64,000 nt of DNA from Obrimoposthia wandeli (GCA_977020255.1 CDROCS010000506.1:1426001-1490000), one strand, 5' to 3'; shown: positions 52,656-59,490, counted from the stretch's first letter. Numbers and translations: made by a program. The notes: generated from the letters alone by a model not told the origin.

Positions 52656-55271
52656 ATGGATACAACTCAATATGTTCCCGCATTACTCTCGGATGAAGAG
52701 TTAACCCTTAGTCATTGTAAAACACACATGCAAGAGTTTCAGGCTTGGCTTGAACAGCGTTTCTTTGATGGTGATGATATTATTGCGTTAGTCTCTTGCC
52801 GCGCAGAATACATGGATCAATTGCTGAATCGCCTTTGGCAAAAGTTTACCCTGGCGACTCATCCTGAATTAGCACTGGTTGCCGTCGGCGGTTATGGCCG
52901 TGGCGAATTACATCCCAAATCAGACATCGATTTGTTGATCACCACGACATCAACGTTAACACCAGAGCAAGAGCAGGCAATATCGCTCTTTATCACCATG
53001 TTATGGGATCTACGCCTAGAAGTGGGCCACAGTGTTCGTACTATCGAAGAATGTTTAGAAAAAGGCTTAGGTGACATCACGATTGCGACAAACTTACTAG
53101 AGTCGCGCTTGATCACAGGGTCGGAAGACACTTACGCCCAGTTACAAGACATTATTAATCCGGAAACATTTTGGCCAAGCCAAGATTTCTTCCAAGCTAA
53201 ACATGAAGAACAGCTTGCTCGCCACCATCAATTCAAAGGTTCTTCATACAATTTAGAACCTGATTTAAAAAGCAGCCCTGGTGGATTACGCGATTTACAA
53301 ACTATTCTGTGGATCACCCGCCGTCATTTTGGTTCAAACAGTTTTTTAGAGTTAACCAACCATGGTTTTTTAACCAAAGGTGAATATCGCGAGCTGGAAG
53401 ATTGTCAGAACTTTTTATGGCGCGTCCGCTTTGCCTTGCATATTGGCTTAAAACGTTGTGATAACCGCCTGCTCTTCGACCGCCAAACAACCGTTGCTGA
53501 AGCGCTCGGTTATAGCGGTGACGGTAATCATGCTGTTGAAACCATGATGAAACAGTTTTACCAAACTATTCGTCGAGTCACCGAACTCAATGAAATGCTG
53601 CTACAGTTATTCAATCAAGCGATACTCGGGCACGTAGGCATGGATGTGCGTAACATCACCGCCGATTTCCGCCTTCGCGGTAGTCTTATAGATACCACCA
53701 GCACAGATCTATTTACGCGTCGCCCTGGTGCGATTATTGAATTATTTTGCCACATTGCTGATAACGAGCATATCACCGGTATTTATGCAGGTACGATACG
53801 TGAACTACGTGATGCCAGACGTAAACTGACCATGTGGTTAGAAGACATTCCCGAATGTCGTGAACAATTCATGCTTTTGCTTAAACATCCTAACGCCAGT
53901 GGTCTCGCGCTGACCTTAATGCATAAACATGGTGTCATTGCCGCTTACATTCCGCAGTGGAGTCGTATCCTCGGGCAGATGCAGTTTGATCTCTTCCATA
54001 ACTACACTGTAGACGAACACACCCATCGTTTAGTGAAGATTATTGATTCTTATAAACGCGATGAAACCAAAGAAACCCATCCACTGTGCTGTGAGATCTA
54101 TCCGCGTTTAGAAAAACCCGAATTGTTACTCATCGCGGCAATTTTTCATGACATAGGTAAAGGCCAAAAAGGTAATCACTCCGAAATTGGCGCCATTGAT
54201 GCTCGCGCATTTTGTAAAAAGCACGGTATTAACAAAGCCGACCGTAAACTCGTGGCGCGATTAGTAAAATATCATTTATTAATGTCTGTGACCGCGCAGC
54301 GTCGTGATATTCACGATCCTGAAATCATTACCGAATTTGCCCGCACCATAGGTGATCAAGAACACTTAAATTACCTCTACTGCCTCACTGTTGCTGATAT
54401 CTGCGCCACCAATGATACCTTATGGAATAACTGGAAAGGCTCACTGCTACGTGAATTATACTTCCTCACCCAGCAAGCACTGCGCCGTGGTTTAGAAAAC
54501 CCACAAGATGCTAAATTCAGGATCAAGAATAATAAAGACACTGCGTTGGCCTTTTTAGAAAATAGCAGCTTTAGTCTCGAGCAGATCCAAGCTTTGTGGA
54601 CGACATTCCGCTCTGAGTACTTTTTGCGTAATGATCCAAGTCAGATCTGTTGGCACACCACGGGGATTTTAAATCATCAAGATCCAAACAAGCCTTTGGT
54701 ACTAATAAGTCAAAACAGTACTCGCGGTGGTAATGAAGTATTTATCTATGCCAAAGAAAATAAACACCTGTTCGCCTCAGCGGTCTCTGCACTGGGTAAT
54801 AAATGTTTAAATATTCACGATGCCAAAATTACATCAAGCCGAAATGGTTATGTACTCGATAGCTTTGTGATCTTAGATCAAACCGGTGATACCCTCGCCC
54901 CTGATCGTGTATTCGCATTACAAGAATCATTAGAAACAGTGTTAACAGAAGCAAAAGCGCCAATATTAAGAAAGCAGCGTATTCCACGACAAATAAAACA
55001 ATTCTCAGTGAAAACTAAAGTTACATTTTTAGCCACGAAGAAAAAACGGACCTTTGTCGAAATCATTACTTTAGATACCCCTGGACTACTTGCGCGTATC
55101 AGCGCCATATTAAGCTCAGAAAATATCGTATTGCATAACGCTAAGATCTCAACTATTGGTGAGCGCGCAGAGGATTTCTTTATTATTTCTGGTAATAACA
55201 ATCAACCGTTATCACCAGAACAGCAAGCTGAATTACGCCACAATCTGATCACTGAATTGGCTGATAGCTAG
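52656..55271 (+). CDS. glnD: Uridylyltransferase/uridylyl-removing enzyme
   Basis: AVGGYGRGELHPKSDIDLL, LEPDLKSSPGGLRD, HD domain, two ACT domains ending GERAEDFF. Confidence 0.97.
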   Translation: MDTTQYVPALLSDEELTLSHCKTHMQEFQAWLEQRFFDGDDIIALVSCRAEYMDQLLNRLWQKFTLATHPELALVAVGGYGRGELHPKSDIDLLITTTSTLTPEQEQAISLFITMLWDLRLEVGHSVRTIEECLEKGLGDITIATNLLESRLITGSEDTYAQLQDIINPETFWPSQDFFQAKHEEQLARHHQFKGSSYNLEPDLKSSPGGLRDLQTILWITRRHFGSNSFLELTNHGFLTKGEYRELEDCQNFLWRVRFALHIGLKRCDNRLLFDRQTTVAEALGYSGDGNHAVETMMKQFYQTIRRVTELNEMLLQLFNQAILGHVGMDVRNITADFRLRGSLIDTTSTDLFTRRPGAIIELFCHIADNEHITGIYAGTIRELRDARRKLTMWLEDIPECREQFMLLLKHPNASGLALTLMHKHGVIAAYIPQWSRILGQMQFDLFHNYTVDEHTHRLVKIIDSYKRDETKETHPLCCEIYPRLEKPELLLIAAIFHDIGKGQKGNHSEIGAIDARAFCKKHGINKADRKLVARLVKYHLLMSVTAQRRDIHDPEIITEFARTIGDQEHLNYLYCLTVADICATNDTLWNNWKGSLLRELYFLTQQALRRGLENPQDAKFRIKNNKDTALAFLENSSFSLEQIQALWTTFRSEYFLRNDPSQICWHTTGILNHQDPNKPLVLISQNSTRGGNEVFIYAKENKHLFASAVSALGNKCLNIHDAKITSSRNGYVLDSFVILDQTGDTLAPDRVFALQESLETVLTEAKAPILRKQRIPRQIKQFSVKTKVTFLATKKKRTFVEIITLDTPGLLARISAILSSENIVLHNAKISTIGERAEDFFIISGNNNQPLSPEQQAELRHNLITELADS

Positions 55272-55436
55272 CTGACCGAAAAATAACAATCATCATTTTC
55301 TTTGAAACGACAAAGCTAAATGTGATAGAACTAACAGTAATATTTTATTATTTATAAAAATAAATAGAACAAAATACTCAGATCCGGCGTGATGTATGAA
55401 TATCACGCCCTTATTCTAAATGGAGATTTCTCAGCT

Positions 55437-56468
55437 ATGGCAACTTTTTCACTCGCTTTCGGTAGTGCAACTAAAAACACTGCAGGTAAAATTATCGAAG
55501 CTTTTTTCCCTAATCCTCTGTTAAACCCAAGTGATAAACTGGTTGCTGATATTAGTGAAGTCGTTAATTATCAAGGTCAAAATGAAGTTGTTGAAGTAAC
55601 GCCTGCACAAGCAGCGCAACTTGCAGCGGCATTCACTGCCAACGATGATGCCGCTAATGCTAAATTTGCAACTGCAGCAGCAAACAGCAAGCAACCATTA
55701 GTACTTGTGATGCTTGCGACAGATGAAAAACCAGCATCCGTTGCTGAAGGTTATTTAAAACTACAACTGATTTCACATCGTTTAGTTAAGCCGCATGGCA
55801 CAGTATTAGACGGTATCTTTGGTCTATTGCACAACATCGCTTGGACTAACCAAGGTCCTATCGATTTACCTGAACTTGCAGACCGTCAAATTGAAGCGCG
55901 TCTTGCTGGTGAAGTATTAACGGTAAGCTGTGTTGATAAATTCCCTAAAATGACAGACTACGTAGTACCGACTGGTGTACGTATTGCCCATACTGCTCGT
56001 GTACGTTTAGGCGCACACGTTGGTGAAGGCACGACGATCATGCATGAAGGTTTTGTTAACTTTAACGCTGGTACTGAAGGCGTGAGCATGGTTGAAGGGC
56101 GTATCTCTGCCGGTGTGATGATTGGTAAAGGTTCTGATATCGGTGGCGGTGCGTCTATCATGGGTACACTGAGTGGTGGTGGTCAGTTAGTTATCTCGAT
56201 GGGCGAAAACTGCTTACTTGGCGCGAACGCTGGTTTGGGTATTCCAATGGGTAACCGTTGCACAATTGAATCAGGCTTATACATTACAGCAGGTTCTAAA
56301 GTACAAATGCTTGATTCAAGCAATAAGCCTGTTGAAGTTGTTAAAGCACGTGATTTAGCAGGTAAAGATGACCTGTTATTCCGTCGTAACTCTATCTCAG
56401 GCACGATTGAATGTTTAACTAATAAATCAGCAGTTGAACTAAACGCAGAGCTACACTCAAATAACTAA
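55437..56468 (+). CDS. dapD: Tetrahydrodipicolinate N-succinyltransferase (long, Vibrio/Pseudomonas type)
   Basis: DKFPKMTDYVVPTGVRIA, GFVNFNAGT, EGRISAGV, LFRRNS; ATG at 55437 behind GGAG. Confidence 0.95.
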   Translation: MATFSLAFGSATKNTAGKIIEAFFPNPLLNPSDKLVADISEVVNYQGQNEVVEVTPAQAAQLAAAFTANDDAANAKFATAAANSKQPLVLVMLATDEKPASVAEGYLKLQLISHRLVKPHGTVLDGIFGLLHNIAWTNQGPIDLPELADRQIEARLAGEVLTVSCVDKFPKMTDYVVPTGVRIAHTARVRLGAHVGEGTTIMHEGFVNFNAGTEGVSMVEGRISAGVMIGKGSDIGGGASIMGTLSGGGQLVISMGENCLLGANAGLGIPMGNRCTIESGLYITAGSKVQMLDSSNKPVEVVKARDLAGKDDLLFRRNSISGTIECLTNKSAVELNAELHSNN

Positions 56469-56503: not shown

Positions 56504-56528
56504 AAGCCCAGTTAAACTGGGCTTTTTT
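56504..56528 (+). terminator. Intrinsic terminator after dapD
   Basis: AAGCCCAG-TTAAA-CTGGGCTT followed by TTTT. Confidence 0.85.
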
Positions 56529-56557
56529 AGCACTAAAAATCAGTGCGAGCAGTAGTG

Positions 56558-56652
56558 TGAGTCGAATAACGCCCTAATCGGCTCACGAAATGAGTTGAAT
56601 AAATCCCTATTCGGCTCATAATATGAGTCGAATAGCTTAATTAATTGACTCA
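56558..56652. repeat. Array of three palindromic units with 33-bp period upstream of fic
   Basis: Units begin at 56558, 56591 and 56624; each has a TGAGTYGAATA arm and an inverted (T)ATTCGGCTCA-like arm. Confidence 0.9.
56595..56622 (+). promoter_or_regulatory. Putative sigma70 promoter of fic embedded in the array
   Basis: TTGAAT (56595-56600)-N16-CATAAT (56617-56622); predicted only. Confidence 0.6.
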
Positions 56653-56665
56653 CGGCGAGGTAAGT

Positions 56666-57772
56666 ATGTGGATATGGGAACAGCAAGAATGGCCAAACTT
56701 TACTTGGCATGAAGCCAGTATCGCGCCTATTTTAAGGCAAGCACACTTTAATCAGGGTTTATTACTGGGTAAAGTCAATGCGCAGAACAATAATGAACAA
56801 CAAGTTGCACTTGATACTCTACTCGCAAATATCGTCTACTCAAGCGCGATTGAAGATGAAAAGCTCAACGCCTTTTCTGTGCGTTCATCGCTAGCCAATA
56901 GATTAGGCATCAGCGAAGACAAACCCTATCCGACATCAGAGAAAACCGATGGTCTTGCCGAGATCATGCTCGATGCTATTACTAATTTAGATGACAAACT
57001 AACCCTTGAACGGATACTGAATTGGCACACGCTGTTATTTCCAGTAGGTTATACCCTATTCAATCCAGTACAAGGTGGTGTATTGCGTGGAGATACACCC
57101 ATGCAAGTCGTATCAGGACGATTAGATCGCCCGACAGTACATTTTGAAGCGCCACCTCGACATGTTCTAGATAATGAATTAACCGCGTTTATCACTTGGT
57201 TTAATCAGTCTAAATCAGATAACACATTAGATCCGTTAATACGCGCTGCAATCACCCACCTATGGTTTGTAACACTCCATCCACTGGATGACGGTAATGG
57301 TCGCATCACACGTTTATTGACAGATTTAGCACTAGCACAAGCAGAAAGCCAATCAATCCGATTCTATGCCATGTCTGTTAGCATTCTAGCGCGACGTAAA
57401 GGTTACTATGAAATATTGGAGCAAACGCAGAAAGGTGAAACAGATATCACCGCTTGGCTTGTTTGGTTTTTTGATACCTTAAACGAAACGCTGCTAACCA
57501 CATTAAATGATATTGACCAAACCGTATTGAAAACCAATTACTGGCTGCACATTGATCAAACGAAGTTAACACCAGAGCAAGCTAAAGTAATTAACCGTTT
57601 ATTAGATGGCGATTTTGATCAAGGCATAAACTCAAGCCAATATCAAAAAGTAGCGAAGGTAAGTAAAGCCACTGCGACTCGACATTTGAACGCTTTAATT
57701 GAACAAGGTTGTTTGACTAAAACCGGTGCAGGCGGGCGTAGCACGCGTTATTTGATTAATTATAAATATTAA
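56666..57772 (+). CDS. Fic-domain protein with DUF4172-like N-terminus and C-terminal HTH
   Basis: MWIWEQQEWPNFTW N-terminus, SSAIED inhibitory-helix-like motif, HPLDDGNGRITR Fic motif, VSKATATRHLNAL HTH; ATG at 56666 behind GAGG. Confidence 0.92.
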   Translation: MWIWEQQEWPNFTWHEASIAPILRQAHFNQGLLLGKVNAQNNNEQQVALDTLLANIVYSSAIEDEKLNAFSVRSSLANRLGISEDKPYPTSEKTDGLAEIMLDAITNLDDKLTLERILNWHTLLFPVGYTLFNPVQGGVLRGDTPMQVVSGRLDRPTVHFEAPPRHVLDNELTAFITWFNQSKSDNTLDPLIRAAITHLWFVTLHPLDDGNGRITRLLTDLALAQAESQSIRFYAMSVSILARRKGYYEILEQTQKGETDITAWLVWFFDTLNETLLTTLNDIDQTVLKTNYWLHIDQTKLTPEQAKVINRLLDGDFDQGINSSQYQKVAKVSKATATRHLNALIEQGCLTKTGAGGRSTRYLINYKY

Positions 57773-57805
57773 ACTATTCGGCTCATAATCTGAGTCGAAT
57801 AGTTT
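57771..57805. repeat. Downstream copy of the fic palindrome
   Basis: AAACTATTCGGCTCA-TAATC-TGAGTCGAATAGTTT; 57774-57802 is 28/29 identical to 56607-56635. Confidence 0.92.
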
Positions 57806-57879
57806 GGTTAATCGCATCACACCAATCCTTATACCGTTTTTACGCGACGACAGTACTACGACGGATTGTCCTCATCTGC

Positions 57880-59332
57880 TTACACAATAAAAGTGGCTAC
57901 TTTGCCGTTTAATTCGCTAGCTTGATGATTGAGTTGTTGCGATTGTTTGAAATAACATTCTGGCAAATTTCATCGGTCACATGTTCATTCTGCAGCAGGG
58001 CAGCAGGAGTTGCAGAGCATCCGAACAATGAGCCATTTTCGAGCTGCTATCCATTAAATTGACGGCTTTGCTGGTCGTCAGTTGCAAGGTTTCAATCGTT
58101 GCTTTAATTTCTTGTGTCGATGAGTGTGTCCGTTGTGATTCACCGCATTCAATGTGCGCATGCTGGTTTAAGCCTCACTTTAGACGCTCGAGACTTCACC
58201 AATCTTTCCGTTGTCAGTTATGTTGCAGAAGCCATTTCGCCGGTATTTGTTTGCACTCGCAATGTGCTCAGTTGATTAATTGCTGGATTAATTGTTGCTG
58301 ACTACCTACAAACAGATTAAAACTATTGGCTAAATGACCTACTTCATCGTTGGCATATATCTCAATGCGTTGGGTAAGATCACCGCCACCTTGCGCAATC
58401 AAAGCCAGCGCATCAGATACACTTCGCAAGGGTTGAAATAACATACCGCACAACAAATTGAATAAAAACGTGCAAACGACGACAACAACAAGCGTGGCAA
58501 TTACTTGGCTCCATATTGCGGCGTACAAAGGGGCGACAGCAGAATTATAATCAACCACCATAATAATAACTAAATCGTTATTCTTAATCGCTTCGGCATA
58601 AATCATGGTGTCTTTGCCGTTAACCATGACTTTTTCAACATGAGGAGCACGTAATGTTTGCTGGATCGCAGCAAAATCTAGACCTAACGACGCAATTTTT
58701 TTATTCAATAGATTAATATCTTGGTGAGCAAAAATAGCACCTTGATTATTACTAATAAGCATATACCCGTCACCAGGCAGTATGACTTGTTCCATATTTT
58801 GCACAATATTTCTAATTTCAACATCCGCGCCAATAACGACAGATTGACCTTGCAGACGATGCTCACTGCCTAATGAGACAACATTCGCCCCTGTCGCCGC
58901 GGCAACCGTGGGATTATCCATAAACACTTTTGAAGGGTCAGCTTTGGCGTTAATGTACCAGCCCCATTTTCGAGGATCATCATTACCTGCTGGCAGCGTG
59001 ATCCCATTTGCATTCTTTTGACTGCCGTCTGGAAATGCGGCGAAGACATTATCAAATTCACCAGATCGCGCCATTTGTTGTAAATGTTTCTCAAGCGTTT
59101 CCGGTGCTATATCATCAGACAACGAACTTAAAATAGTACCTTTAGATGCAATCCAATCCGCTACATATTGATTATATGAAGCTGATGACCCTTTTAACCG
59201 CTCCTCAATTTCAACATCTAAACGTTGCAGTGATGACCAAAAAGATAGGGAGGCCACTAGTATCCCACCGAGTATAATGGCAAGACTCGCCGATAATGCC
59301 AGCTTGTTTTTGAGCGACATGTTCTTAAACAT
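57880..59332 (-). pseudogene. Methyl-accepting chemotaxis protein with intact sensor/HAMP half and fragmented signalling domain
   Basis: TM-dCache-TM-HAMP is open from ATG 59332 to TGA 58268. Downstream only remnants remain: EMASAT, LNQHA, SQRTHSSTQEIKATIETLQ and LNHQASELNGKVATFIV-stop (57880). Confidence 0.85.
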
Positions 59333-59462
59333 AAAATACCTCTGATTGATTAACATAACGCTCCCAAATTCAATCTTGGGCGAGTTAATTCCATGGTGAG
59401 CAAGAATAATTGATATAACATGCGGTTCTGGTTCATGCGCCGTAGACTCGTTTCTCAGAACC

Positions 59463-59490
59463 AAAAAAGCCACTGCAAGTGCAGTGGCTT
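59463..59490 (-). terminator. Intrinsic terminator after ptsG
   Basis: Minus strand AAGCCACTGCACTTGCAGTGGCTTTTTT. Confidence 0.88.

What the first reader, a model, noticed from the sequence alone, without database searches (positions are those of the whole stretch)
56558..56665. fic promoter is built inside a phased palindromic array (33-bp period x3)
Seen: units at 56558, 56591 and 56624 with alternating arms TGAGTYGAATA and (T)ATTCGGCTCA, ending 13 bp before the ATG. The one arm variant, TGAGTTGAAT, creates a -35 (TTGAAT), and the central palindrome contains the -10 (CATAAT) 16 bp away. A 33-bp period is about three helical turns, so sites share one DNA face. The arms can also pair in two registers as RNA, with mismatches mostly G-U on the + strand. 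Established: some Fic proteins carry a C-terminal winged HTH. Inference: cooperative autorepression by the Fic HTH, a one-gene enzyme-plus-repressor module in which DNA binding may also gate catalysis.
Basis: partly seen in the sequence, partly recalled or inferred. Interest (0 to 1): 0.75.

Follow-up and report, generated by a model that had tools for sequence, protein, structure and literature searches.

The report
Fic gene's own operator array
The repeated palindromes in front of this Moritella fic gene are very probably the DNA sites where the Fic enzyme's own C-terminal DNA-binding domain sits to shut off its promoter, a mechanism already shown for one distant relative, and the same kind of site turns up, with matching changes in protein and DNA, in front of about 150 related genes, including a studied Coxiella enzyme whose specific DNA target was unknown.

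Summary
Six 11-bp half-sites (TGAGYCGAATA and its complement) alternate in orientation at 56558-56652. They end 13 nt before the fic ATG (56666) and enclose a -35/-10 pair (TTGAAT 56595, CATAAT 56617). The motif occurs nowhere else in the 1.35-Gb assembly except as a second copy right after the fic stop (57775-57819).

The gene encodes a DUF4172-Fic-winged-HTH protein, closest to Coxiella CbFic2 (PDB 8CIL). In 157 homologous loci, 124 carry at least 3 such half-sites in the 150 nt before the start codon. No neighbouring gene is shared across loci. Half-site positions 3-6 change together with the first residues of the recognition helix: 10 of 11 independent pairs against 20 of 59, p = 0.0006. 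An RNA hairpin reading is not supported.

The best explanation is autorepression by the Fic protein's own wHTH. This is known in kind: CccR in 2022, SoFic binding its own promoter in 2026, and CbFic2 activity gated by DNA in 2023.

Three things are new:
- a family-wide operator code;
- a predicted specific site at the CbFic2 promoter (GAAGCGATTA-N6-TAATCGCTTC);
- arrays on both sides of fic, with relic arrays left behind in Moritella species that lack fic.

No binding, repression or transcription-start data exist for this locus.

The parts
56504..56530 (+). Intrinsic terminator of dapD: a 10-bp G+C-rich stem followed by a T run. It isolates fic from upstream transcription.
   Evidence: Inverted repeat I8; sequence; conserved after dapD in other Moritella genomes.
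56558..56585 (.). Distal operator unit: half-sites 56558-56568 (TGAGTCGAATA) and 56575-56585 (complement of TGAGCCGATTA), 6-nt spacer.
   Evidence: It is the least conserved unit: degenerate or missing in L002 and L003, and variable between strains.
56591..56618 (.). Middle operator unit: half-sites 56591-56601 (TGAGTTGAATA, holding the -35-like TTGAAT at 56595-56600) and 56608-56618 (complement of TGAGCCGAATA).
   Evidence: The T-variant that makes TTGAAT is conserved in all four Moritella loci and in Catenovulum.
56608..56634 (.). Central <-N5-> palindrome (11-5-11) that holds the -10-like CATAAT at 56617-56622.
   Evidence: Inverted repeat I2 (93% complementary). The same placement of CATAAT is seen in 10 loci.
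56624..56652 (.). Proximal operator unit: half-sites 56624-56634 (TGAGTCGAATA) and 56642-56652 (complement of TGAGTCAATTA), 7-nt spacer. It would lie just downstream of the predicted transcription start near 56629.
   Evidence: The transcription start is predicted only.
56657..56660 (+). Shine-Dalgarno-like GAGG, 5 nt before the ATG.
   Evidence: Sequence.
56666..57772 (+). fic gene: a 368-aa class II Fic protein with DUF4172 (residues 2-82), a Fic domain (112-223) and a C-terminal winged HTH (about 303-364).
   Evidence: Pfam. PDB 8CIL matches at E 1.6e-86 over the full length. AlphaFold2 model has pLDDT 86. Foldseek top hit is 8CIL with TM 0.8. PADLOC SoFic model matches at E 1.6e-40.
57665..57703 (+). 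Codons of the predicted recognition helix (residues 334-346, KATATRHLNALIE). Residues 334, 335 and 338 vary between clades together with the half-site.
   Evidence: Helix H334-346 in the model. It aligns with the third wHTH helix of CbFic2 (PMC10628234).
57775..57819 (.). Second, partial array right after the stop codon: half-sites 57775-57785 (-), 57791-57801 (+) and 57809-57819 (-, TGATGCGATTA). It parallels 56608-56652. As RNA it can fold into an 18-bp hairpin with no T run.
   Evidence: Fold is -22.3 kcal/mol, z -7.3. No terminator call. Conserved in L001-L003.

Best explanation
The array is the operator of the fic promoter, and the protein that binds it is the Fic enzyme itself, through its C-terminal winged helix-turn-helix.

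Each 11-bp half-site (general form TG-N4-G-A-W-T-A; here TGAGYCGAATA) would be read by one wHTH. The first residues of the recognition helix (K334, A335, T338 here) would read half-site positions 3-6. Protomers would sit in alternating orientation, 16-18 bp apart centre to centre, with a 33-34 bp period. They would cover the -35, the -10 and the start site, so that accumulated Fic shuts off its own transcription. Because the closest solved relative changes between AMPylating and deAMPylating states on DNA binding, occupancy of this array may also set the enzyme's activity.

Shown here:
- the sites, their uniqueness in the assembly and their overlap with promoter-like hexamers;
- their conservation in front of 124 of 157 homologous genes;
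- their covariation with the recognition helix.

Taken from the literature on relatives: autorepression, the need for a dimer, and gating of catalysis by DNA.

Inferred: binding by this particular protein, cooperativity, which half-sites one dimer bridges, and the role of the second array after the stop codon.
For: 1. Anatomy: six alternating half-sites enclose TTGAAT-16-CATAAT and end 13 nt before the ATG.

2. Uniqueness: the motif occurs only at the two flanks of fic in the whole assembly.

3. The protein has a confidently modelled wHTH: H303-313, H323-330, H334-346 plus a beta wing. It is a full-length relative of CbFic2.

4. Conservation, close relatives: in 77 loci with 52-97% identical proteins there are 312 half-sites against 33 in shuffles, at fixed distances from the ATG.

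5. Conservation, wider sample: in 157 loci that include roughly 40% identical subfamilies there are 580 strict half-sites against 62 in shuffles, and 124 loci have at least 3.

6. No neighbouring gene is shared by more than 10 of 76 loci. The half-site type follows the Fic clade, not the host. For example, Yersinia alsatica carries the TGAT type together with Pseudoalteromonas-type proteins, while Mixta and Scandinavium carry TGAGCC.

7. Specificity code (helix residues 334/335 and the matching half-site):
- KA gives TGAGCC
- KP gives TGAT..
- PA gives TGAGGT
- QD gives TGCGGA
- ND gives TGCGGT
- HD gives TGCGTA
- NR gives TGGCGY
- RA with Y338 gives TGAAGC

8. In 70 phylogenetically independent pairs, the half-site differs in 10 of 11 pairs whose helix residues differ, against 20 of 59 pairs whose residues are the same (Fisher p 0.0006). 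For pairs at distance 0.3 or more the counts are 10/11 against 7/19 (p 0.005).

9. Precedent: CccR autorepression has been shown by lacZ fusion, EMSA, footprinting and ITC (PMC9755527). SoFic binds the first 100 bp before its own start codon. CbFic2 activity is switched by DNA.

10. The promoter of CbFic2 itself carries the predicted type of array.
Against: There is no binding, repression or transcription-start data for this locus. The reads tool returned only contigs, and one metatranscriptome contig spans dapD through fic, which neither maps nor excludes a start in the array.

Single-trait tests on the tree have too few independent changes to be significant. In the pooled pair test, pairs with different helices are also the more divergent ones (median distance 0.99 against 0.14), and this is only partly controlled.

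The half-site scans fixed positions 1-3 and 8-11 or positions 1, 2 and 7-10. Only the free positions count as evidence.

Promoter-like hexamers sit at clade-specific offsets within the array and are weak in Pseudomonas.

CbFic2 bound random DNA at about 0.1-0.2 uM, and deleting its HTH did not lower affinity for a 20-mer. The wHTH may therefore add specificity rather than most of the affinity.

An odd number of half-sites (three) in several clades does not fit simple dimer-per-palindrome binding.
Confidence: 0.8

Rival explanations
1. The repeats are primarily recombination substrates or the ends of a small mobile cassette. fic would enter and leave the chromosome by recombination between array copies, and any regulatory role would be secondary.
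For: fic is bracketed by two array copies that are 40/50 identical. Scandinavium has the same bracket, and there the whole array-fic-array block is an insertion relative to other Enterobacteriaceae. Of 13 Moritella species genomes, only 3 have fic. Of the 10 without any homologue, 7 keep array relics at the same dapD-MCP site, and the junctions fall inside repeated half-sites: L087 and L090 fuse the 56558-type half-site to the 57791 flank, and L084 and L092 join within the <-N5-> palindrome. The 11-6-11 geometry resembles tyrosine-recombinase core sites (from my own knowledge).
Against: Most lineages have no downstream copy (71 of 73 non-Moritella, non-Scandinavium loci). The array keeps a fixed distance to the start codon and overlaps promoter hexamers in every subfamily. 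The half-site covaries with the Fic recognition helix. No recombinase is linked to the gene. Deletion between short direct repeats needs no dedicated system.
Confidence: 0.08
2. The sites are bound by another trans-acting regulator of the host, not by Fic.
For: No binding data exist. The half-site has a TGA...TCA flavour common to many regulators (from my own knowledge).
Against: The palindrome occurs nowhere else in this genome. No gene other than fic is shared across loci. The half-site type follows the Fic clade across hosts from Gamma- and Betaproteobacteria, and covaries with Fic helix residues. Fic-less Moritella keep decaying relics.
Confidence: 0.04
3. The array acts as RNA: tandem hairpins in a 5' leader (attenuator or stability element), with a matching 3' hairpin after the stop codon.
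For: The + strand of 56550-56665 folds at -40.5 kcal/mol (z -5.5). The downstream palindrome folds at -22.3 kcal/mol (z -7.3). In the window the arm mismatches are G-U on the + strand.
Against: The - strand folds almost as well (z -4.5), as any palindromic DNA would. Across loci, arms that could pair differ by 1.71 of 11 positions, and arms in the same orientation one period apart, which cannot pair, differ by 1.68 of 11. Of 292 mismatched positions, 147 break pairing on both strands. The predicted -10 lies inside the array, so most of the array would not be transcribed; the leader from 56629 has no significant fold (z +1.4). There is no Rfam match. The dapD terminator lies just upstream. The 3' hairpin could still stabilise or end the fic mRNA.
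Confidence: 0.03

Closest known systems
CccR of Yersinia pseudotuberculosis (Fic toxin and autorepressor; PMC9755527; probably PDB 7XUX)
   Same: It is a class II Fic enzyme with an N-terminal dimer helix and a C-terminal wHTH. The wHTH half binds inverted repeats that lie at the -35/-10 of its own promoter. Repression needs the dimer. It is a one-gene enzyme-plus-repressor.
   Different: It is only about 16% identical in the structural alignment, with E 9e-4 by sequence. Its reported operator is two 10-bp repeats (AGATAATCAT) 26 bp apart. Here there are 4-6 half-sites of 11 bp, separated alternately by 5 and 6-7 bp, with a different sequence. CccR is a T6SS effector; nothing suggests secretion here.
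CbFic2 of Coxiella burnetii (CBU_0822; PDB 8CIL; PMC10628234)
   Same: It is the closest solved relative: same DUF4172-Fic-wHTH architecture, E 1.6e-86, TM 0.8 and about 40% identity. It is a dimer through helix alpha-1. DNA binding changes its AMPylation/deAMPylation balance.
   Different: Only random oligonucleotides were tested, and its specific site was left open. Its recognition helix begins S-R-T-T-A-Y rather than S-K-A-T-A-T. Its promoter carries a three-half-site array of the GAAGCGATTA type, with no copy after the stop codon. It is discussed in the literature as a host-directed effector.
SoFic of Shewanella oneidensis and the 'SoFic' anti-phage system (bioRxiv 10.64898/2026.07.09.737422; PMC12249575)
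   Same: It has a Fic domain plus a wHTH. The dimer binds the first 100 bp before its own start codon. The PADLOC SoFic model matches this protein over its whole length (E 1.6e-40).
   Different: Only the Fic core aligns by sequence (E 2e-9). The NCBIfam SoFic equivalog scores 66 bits against a cut-off of 550. No operator has been defined for SoFic. There is no downstream small antitoxin-like ORF here.
Autoregulated type II toxin-antitoxin operons such as phd-doc (Doc has the Fic fold)
   Same: A growth-arresting Fido-fold enzyme whose expression is held down by a repressor that binds palindromes over its own promoter (from my own knowledge).
   Different: In those systems the repressor is a separate antitoxin. 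Here the DNA-binding domain and the inhibitory helix are part of the enzyme itself.

Membership tests
Fic/DOC family, class II (inhibitory helix N-terminal to the Fic core) | Fic domain with the catalytic motif HxFx(D/E)GNGRxxR | tested here: met
   PF02661 matches at E 1.6e-11, above its cut-off. The motif reads HPLDDGNGRITR, with L in place of F. H205, D209, G210, N211, G212, R213 and R216 are invariant in 31 relatives.
Fic/DOC family, class II (inhibitory helix N-terminal to the Fic core) | Inhibitory motif (S/T)xxxE(G/N) N-terminal to the core | tested here: inconclusive
   S59-S-A-I-E63 is present and invariant. The next residue is D64 here, where the motif and most relatives have G.
DUF4172-Fic-wHTH proteins (CbFic2-like) | N-terminal DUF4172 and C-terminal winged HTH on one chain | tested here: met
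   PF13776 matches at E 3e-27. The model shows three helices plus a beta hairpin at residues 303-364.
Fic-wHTH autorepressors (as defined by CccR) | Inverted repeats overlapping the -35/-10 of the enzyme's own promoter | tested here: met
   The promoter is predicted by consensus only.
Fic-wHTH autorepressors (as defined by CccR) | Specific binding of the wHTH to those repeats | not testable with these tools
   Indirect support comes only from covariation of helix residues 334/335 with half-site positions 3-6.
Fic-wHTH autorepressors (as defined by CccR) | Derepression of the promoter when the gene or the repeats are removed | not testable with these tools
   No expression data. The reads tool gave contigs only.
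SoFic anti-phage defence system (PADLOC / DefenseFinder sense) | Match to the system's protein model | tested here: met
   PDLC03963 SoFic matches at E 1.6e-40, residues 13-367.
SoFic anti-phage defence system (PADLOC / DefenseFinder sense) | Orthology to SoFic (NCBIfam equivalog NF046030) | tested here: not met
   65.6 bits against a cut-off of 550.
SoFic anti-phage defence system (PADLOC / DefenseFinder sense) | Protection against phage | not testable with these tools
   Needs a plaque assay.

The most novel reading that the evidence does not exclude
The operator array may be more than a repressor site: it could be the platform that keeps the enzyme harmless. Alternating half-sites 16-18 bp apart would line up Fic protomers head-to-head and tail-to-tail on the cell's own DNA. 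With the second array after the stop codon, they could loop the gene. This would hold the protein in the dimeric, deAMPylating state described for CbFic2. Anything that pulls the protein off its few specific sites, such as a flood of foreign DNA, would release active AMPylating enzyme. The gene's own operator would then play the part of the antitoxin in a one-gene, DNA-sensing abortive-infection module. The same repeats would also make the gene easy to delete, which would explain the relic arrays in Moritella species that lack fic.
Probability: 0.12. Interest if true: 0.8.

Novelty: new variant of a known kind. Interest (0 to 1): 0.5.

Why it matters
Fic enzymes with a C-terminal wHTH are widespread: DUF4172 was found in 90 of 401 evenly sampled genomes of this class. 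An operator has been mapped for only one of them, CccR.

This analysis gives a sequence-level operator model for the CbFic2-like branch. It consists of a general half-site, an alternating 5/6-7-nt spacing, and a set of helix-residue to base correspondences that can be tested by swapping residues.

It also names a concrete candidate for the specific DNA site of CbFic2. The authors of the CbFic2 study left that question open, and it bears on whether specific DNA, rather than any DNA, sets the AMPylation/deAMPylation switch.

For genome annotation, the array marks the true start codon and promoter of these genes. Relic arrays mark places where a fic gene has been lost.

Tried and rejected
1. Genome-wide repeat (REP or MITE): rejected. 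The palindrome occurs only at fic in the whole assembly. The bare 11-mer is too short to be informative in 1.35 Gb.

2. Known RNA family: nothing near any gathering score.

3. Transcription start or expression from public reads: all runs were held as contigs, so no 5' ends could be read. A metatranscriptome contig spans dapD to fic.

4. Downstream palindrome as a canonical intrinsic terminator: no T run and no terminator call.

5. A downstream array driving another gene: in both Moritella and Scandinavium the next gene is convergent.

6. Relic arrays at the Scandinavium site in other Enterobacteriaceae: none found in the genomes searched.

7. Single-trait independent contrasts: too few independent changes. 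I replaced them with a pooled test on 70 independent pairs.

8. Reaching Coxiella through order-level genome searches: failed. It was reached instead through a protein search with a CbFic2-clade member, followed by an exact look-up of the encoding contig.

9. CRP-like site (the gene family is named after cAMP): the spacing does not fit TGTGA-N6-TCACA. This was judged by eye and from my own knowledge only.

10. Not attempted: the geometry of a dimer on DNA, because no coordinates of 8CIL and no multimer prediction were available; and the SoFic and CccR promoters, because no sequence reference was available.

Full report
**What is in the window**

The window is bacterial. It lies on contig C506 of a 1.35-Gb, 6912-contig assembly, and its genes are 91-97% identical to Moritella. 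Around the finding lie glnD (52656-55271), dapD (55389-56468), fic (56666-57772), a shortened chemoreceptor gene on the minus strand, and a PTS EIICB gene.

dapD ends with a clean stem-loop plus T run at 56504-56530. Between that terminator and the fic ATG lie six 11-bp half-sites in alternating orientation, at 56558, 56575, 56591, 56608, 56624 and 56642. Read in one sense they are TGAGTCGAATA, TGAGCCGATTA, TGAGTTGAATA, TGAGCCGAATA, TGAGTCGAATA and TGAGTCAATTA.

The array ends 13 nt before the ATG at 56666, and a GAGG sits at 56657-56660. The consensus scan finds TTGAAT (56595) - 16 nt - CATAAT (56617) inside the array.

**Is it more than chance?**

The three-unit pattern has no other match in the whole assembly and none for the reversed control. 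The <-N5-> palindrome matches only twice, at 56610 and at 57777 in window coordinates, so both copies flank fic.

The second copy is more than a palindrome. The stretch 57772-57822 is 40/50 identical to 56606-56655 and holds three half-sites in the same order.

**The protein**

The 368-aa product has DUF4172, a Fic domain and weak C-terminal HTH-type hits. It matches PDB 8CIL, Coxiella burnetii CbFic2, over its full length (E 1.6e-86). SoFic and FICD match only in the Fic core.

An AlphaFold2 model built from 31 relatives (pLDDT 86) shows a winged HTH: helices 303-313, 323-330 and 334-346, followed by a beta hairpin. Foldseek puts 8CIL first with TM 0.8. Helix 334-346 aligns with the third wHTH helix of CbFic2, which the CbFic2 paper treats as the DNA-reading helix.

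PADLOC's SoFic model matches (E 1.6e-40), but the NCBIfam SoFic equivalog is far below its cut-off.

**Comparative test, close relatives**

A scan of one genome per species gave 80 loci with proteins 52-97% identical. Nearly all carry the same kind of array in the 140 nt before the start codon.

- The best 11-mer family has 4-6 members in 52 of 77 regions, where shuffles mostly reach 3.
- A scan that fixes only TGA and AATA finds 312 sites against 33 in shuffles.
- Sites sit at fixed distances from the ATG: about 82/64/48/30 or 75/58/42/24, with an extra distal pair in Moritella and in a Pseudoalteromonas-type group.
- No neighbouring gene is shared by more than 10 of 76 loci, so fic is the only gene that always accompanies the array.

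**Comparative test, wider family**

DUF4172 was found in 90 of 401 evenly drawn genomes of the class, and I fetched 87 more loci.

Of 157 usable loci, 124 have at least three strict half-sites (TG-N4-[GA]-A-[AT]-T) in the 150 nt upstream. The total is 580 sites against 62 in shuffles.

Subfamilies only about 40% identical keep the architecture but use other half-sites: TGCGGAGAWTA, TGCGGTGAWTA, TGCGTAGAWTA, TGGCGYGAWTA, TGAAGCGATTA and TGAGYTATAAA.

**Covariation with the recognition helix**

The free half-site positions follow the first residues of the recognition helix.

| Helix residues 334/335 | Half-site |
|---|---|
| K-A | TGAGCC |
| K-P or R-P | TGAT.. |
| P-A | TGAGGT |
| R-A | TGAGGC with A at position 7 |
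| Q-D | TGCGGA |
| N-D | TGCGGT |
| H-D | TGCGTA |
| N-R | TGGCGY |
| R-A with Tyr338 | TGAAGC |

Within the close relatives, A335 goes with G at position 4 in 171 of 182 sites, and P335 goes with T in 101 of 110 sites.

These clades are few, and single-trait contrasts on a tree have only 1-6 independent changes each. I therefore took 70 pairs of loci whose connecting paths share no branch.

- Where residues 334/335 differ, the consensus at half-site positions 3-6 differs in 10 of 11 pairs.
- Where they are the same, it differs in 20 of 59 pairs (Fisher p 0.0006).
- Among pairs at distance 0.3 or more, the counts are 10/11 against 7/19 (p 0.005).

Divergence is only partly controlled, because pairs with different helices are more distant overall. 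The half-site type also follows the protein clade rather than the host.

**RNA or DNA?**

Both strands of the array fold well, as any palindromic DNA must. Across loci, arms that could pair differ by 1.71 of 11 positions, and arms one period apart, which cannot pair, differ by 1.68. Half of all mismatches break pairing on both strands.

Every half-site therefore resembles one consensus. That is what a protein site does and what an RNA stem need not do. Promoter-like hexamers always lie inside the array, at clade-specific offsets, so most of the array would not be transcribed. Rfam gives nothing.

**What is already known**

- CccR of Yersinia pseudotuberculosis, a class II Fic protein with a wHTH, represses its own promoter. 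Deletion gives 3.3-fold derepression. The C-terminal half shifts the promoter probe. The footprint is AGATAATCAT-N26-ATGATAATCT at the -35/-10. Binding is 2:1 and needs the dimer (PMC9755527).
- Dimeric SoFic binds the first 100 bp before its own start codon; no operator has been defined (bioRxiv 10.64898/2026.07.09.737422).
- CbFic2 binds DNA, is stimulated by it, and is proposed to switch from an AMPylating monomer to a deAMPylating dimer on DNA. Only random DNA was used, and the authors call a specific sequence 'of special interest' (PMC10628234).

**The CbFic2 promoter**

Three of the newly fetched loci encode CbFic2-clade proteins (E 1e-147 to 1e-173 against 8CIL) and carry TGAAGCGATTA arrays. 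A protein search with one of them returned a 378-aa protein that is 99% identical to 8CIL. I fetched a contig that encodes it.

Ten nucleotides before its ATG ends an array of three half-sites: GAAGCGATTA, six bases, the perfect complement TAATCGCTTC, five bases, then CGAAGCAATTG. A TATAAT lies across the first spacer and the second half-site. There is no array after its stop codon. This is a concrete candidate for the specific site of a studied enzyme.

**The bracket and the relics**

Arrays after the stop codon occur only in Moritella and Scandinavium among 73 loci. In both, the next gene is convergent. In Scandinavium the whole array-fic-array block is an insertion relative to other Enterobacteriaceae, which show neither fic nor arrays at that site.

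Of 13 Moritella species genomes, 3 have fic, always between dapD and the chemoreceptor gene. The other 10 have no homologue at E 1e-10 or better. Seven of those ten keep one to four half-sites after dapD. The junctions to the downstream flank fall inside repeated half-sites, in at least three different ways.

The simplest reading is repeated loss of fic by recombination between its two arrays. The reverse, insertion into a resident array, is not excluded. What the downstream copy does while fic is present is open: a looping partner, an mRNA 3' hairpin (-22.3 kcal/mol, no T run), or nothing.

**Verdict**

The array is real, specific and conserved. Its most likely role is as the operator through which the Fic protein's own wHTH represses its promoter (confidence 0.8).

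Cooperativity, the pairing of half-sites by one dimer, the transcription start and any effect on catalysis are inferences.

It is a new variant of a known kind:
- a different subfamily from CccR;
- a multi-site alternating operator instead of two distant repeats;
- a readable helix-to-base code;
- a testable site for CbFic2;
- a bracket-and-relic pattern.

Noticed in passing
whole window (G000:C506:1426001-1490000): The window is Moritella DNA (Fic 97% and dapD 94% identical to M. dasanensis) on a contig of at least 1.49 Mb, inside a 1.35-Gb, 6912-contig assembly. It is therefore a bacterial associate or contaminant of a eukaryote assembly.
   Followed up: partly
57880-59473 (-): The chemoreceptor gene convergent with fic is shortened. 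Only the dCache and HAMP domains lie in an open frame (58268-59473). The 3' part (57880-58268) matches the gene's end in other Moritella but is broken. Other strains have about 120 letters where this genome has 50 (57972-58023).
   Followed up: partly
L084-L093 (Moritella genomes without fic), after dapD: Seven of ten fic-less Moritella species keep one to four operator half-sites at the empty site, with deletion junctions inside the repeats. Three have none. These look like relics of lost fic genes.
   Followed up: yes
L054, L057, L100 (Scandinavium): A second lineage has a four-half-site array directly after the fic stop codon, overlapping the TGA. The whole array-fic-array block is an insertion relative to other Enterobacteriaceae.
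   Followed up: partly
L067-L069, L072, L075 (Betaproteobacteria): The fic stop codon overlaps the start (ATGA) of a gene beginning MSNNEIVQKLWN. From my own knowledge this looks like a type I restriction-modification methylase subunit, so the array may control a fic-hsdM operon there.
   Followed up: no
L004, L005, L008, L009, L014, L015, L024, L026: Fic genes that are nearly identical to one another (all 72-73% identical to the window's Fic), with TGAT-type arrays, sit in the same set of neighbouring genes in Amphritea, Pseudoalteromonas, Yersinia, Marinomonas, Paraglaciecola and Maribrevibacterium. This points to a shared mobile element.
   Followed up: no
L042, L050, L055: These fic homologues are cut short by stop codons (128, 60 and 102 aa), while their upstream arrays are still recognisable.
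   Followed up: no
L134, L171, L146 and other TGCGGAGATTA-type loci: In the Q-D helix subfamily the array is two ->N7<-N5-> triplets, and the last half-site ends 4-8 nt before the ATG. Its GGAG would double as the ribosome-binding site, so a bound protein could also block translation.
   Followed up: no
L216:1449-1490 (Coxiella burnetii contig encoding CbFic2): The CbFic2 promoter holds a perfect 10-bp inverted repeat (GAAGCGATTA-N6-TAATCGCTTC) plus a third half-site, with a TATAAT inside, ending 10 nt before the ATG. An LRR-protein gene is convergent downstream.
   Followed up: yes
56666-57772, residue 64 and residue 207: In the window's Fic, the residue after the inhibitory Glu63 is Asp where the motif has Gly or Asn. 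The catalytic motif reads HPL instead of HPF. The effect on activity is unknown.
   Followed up: no
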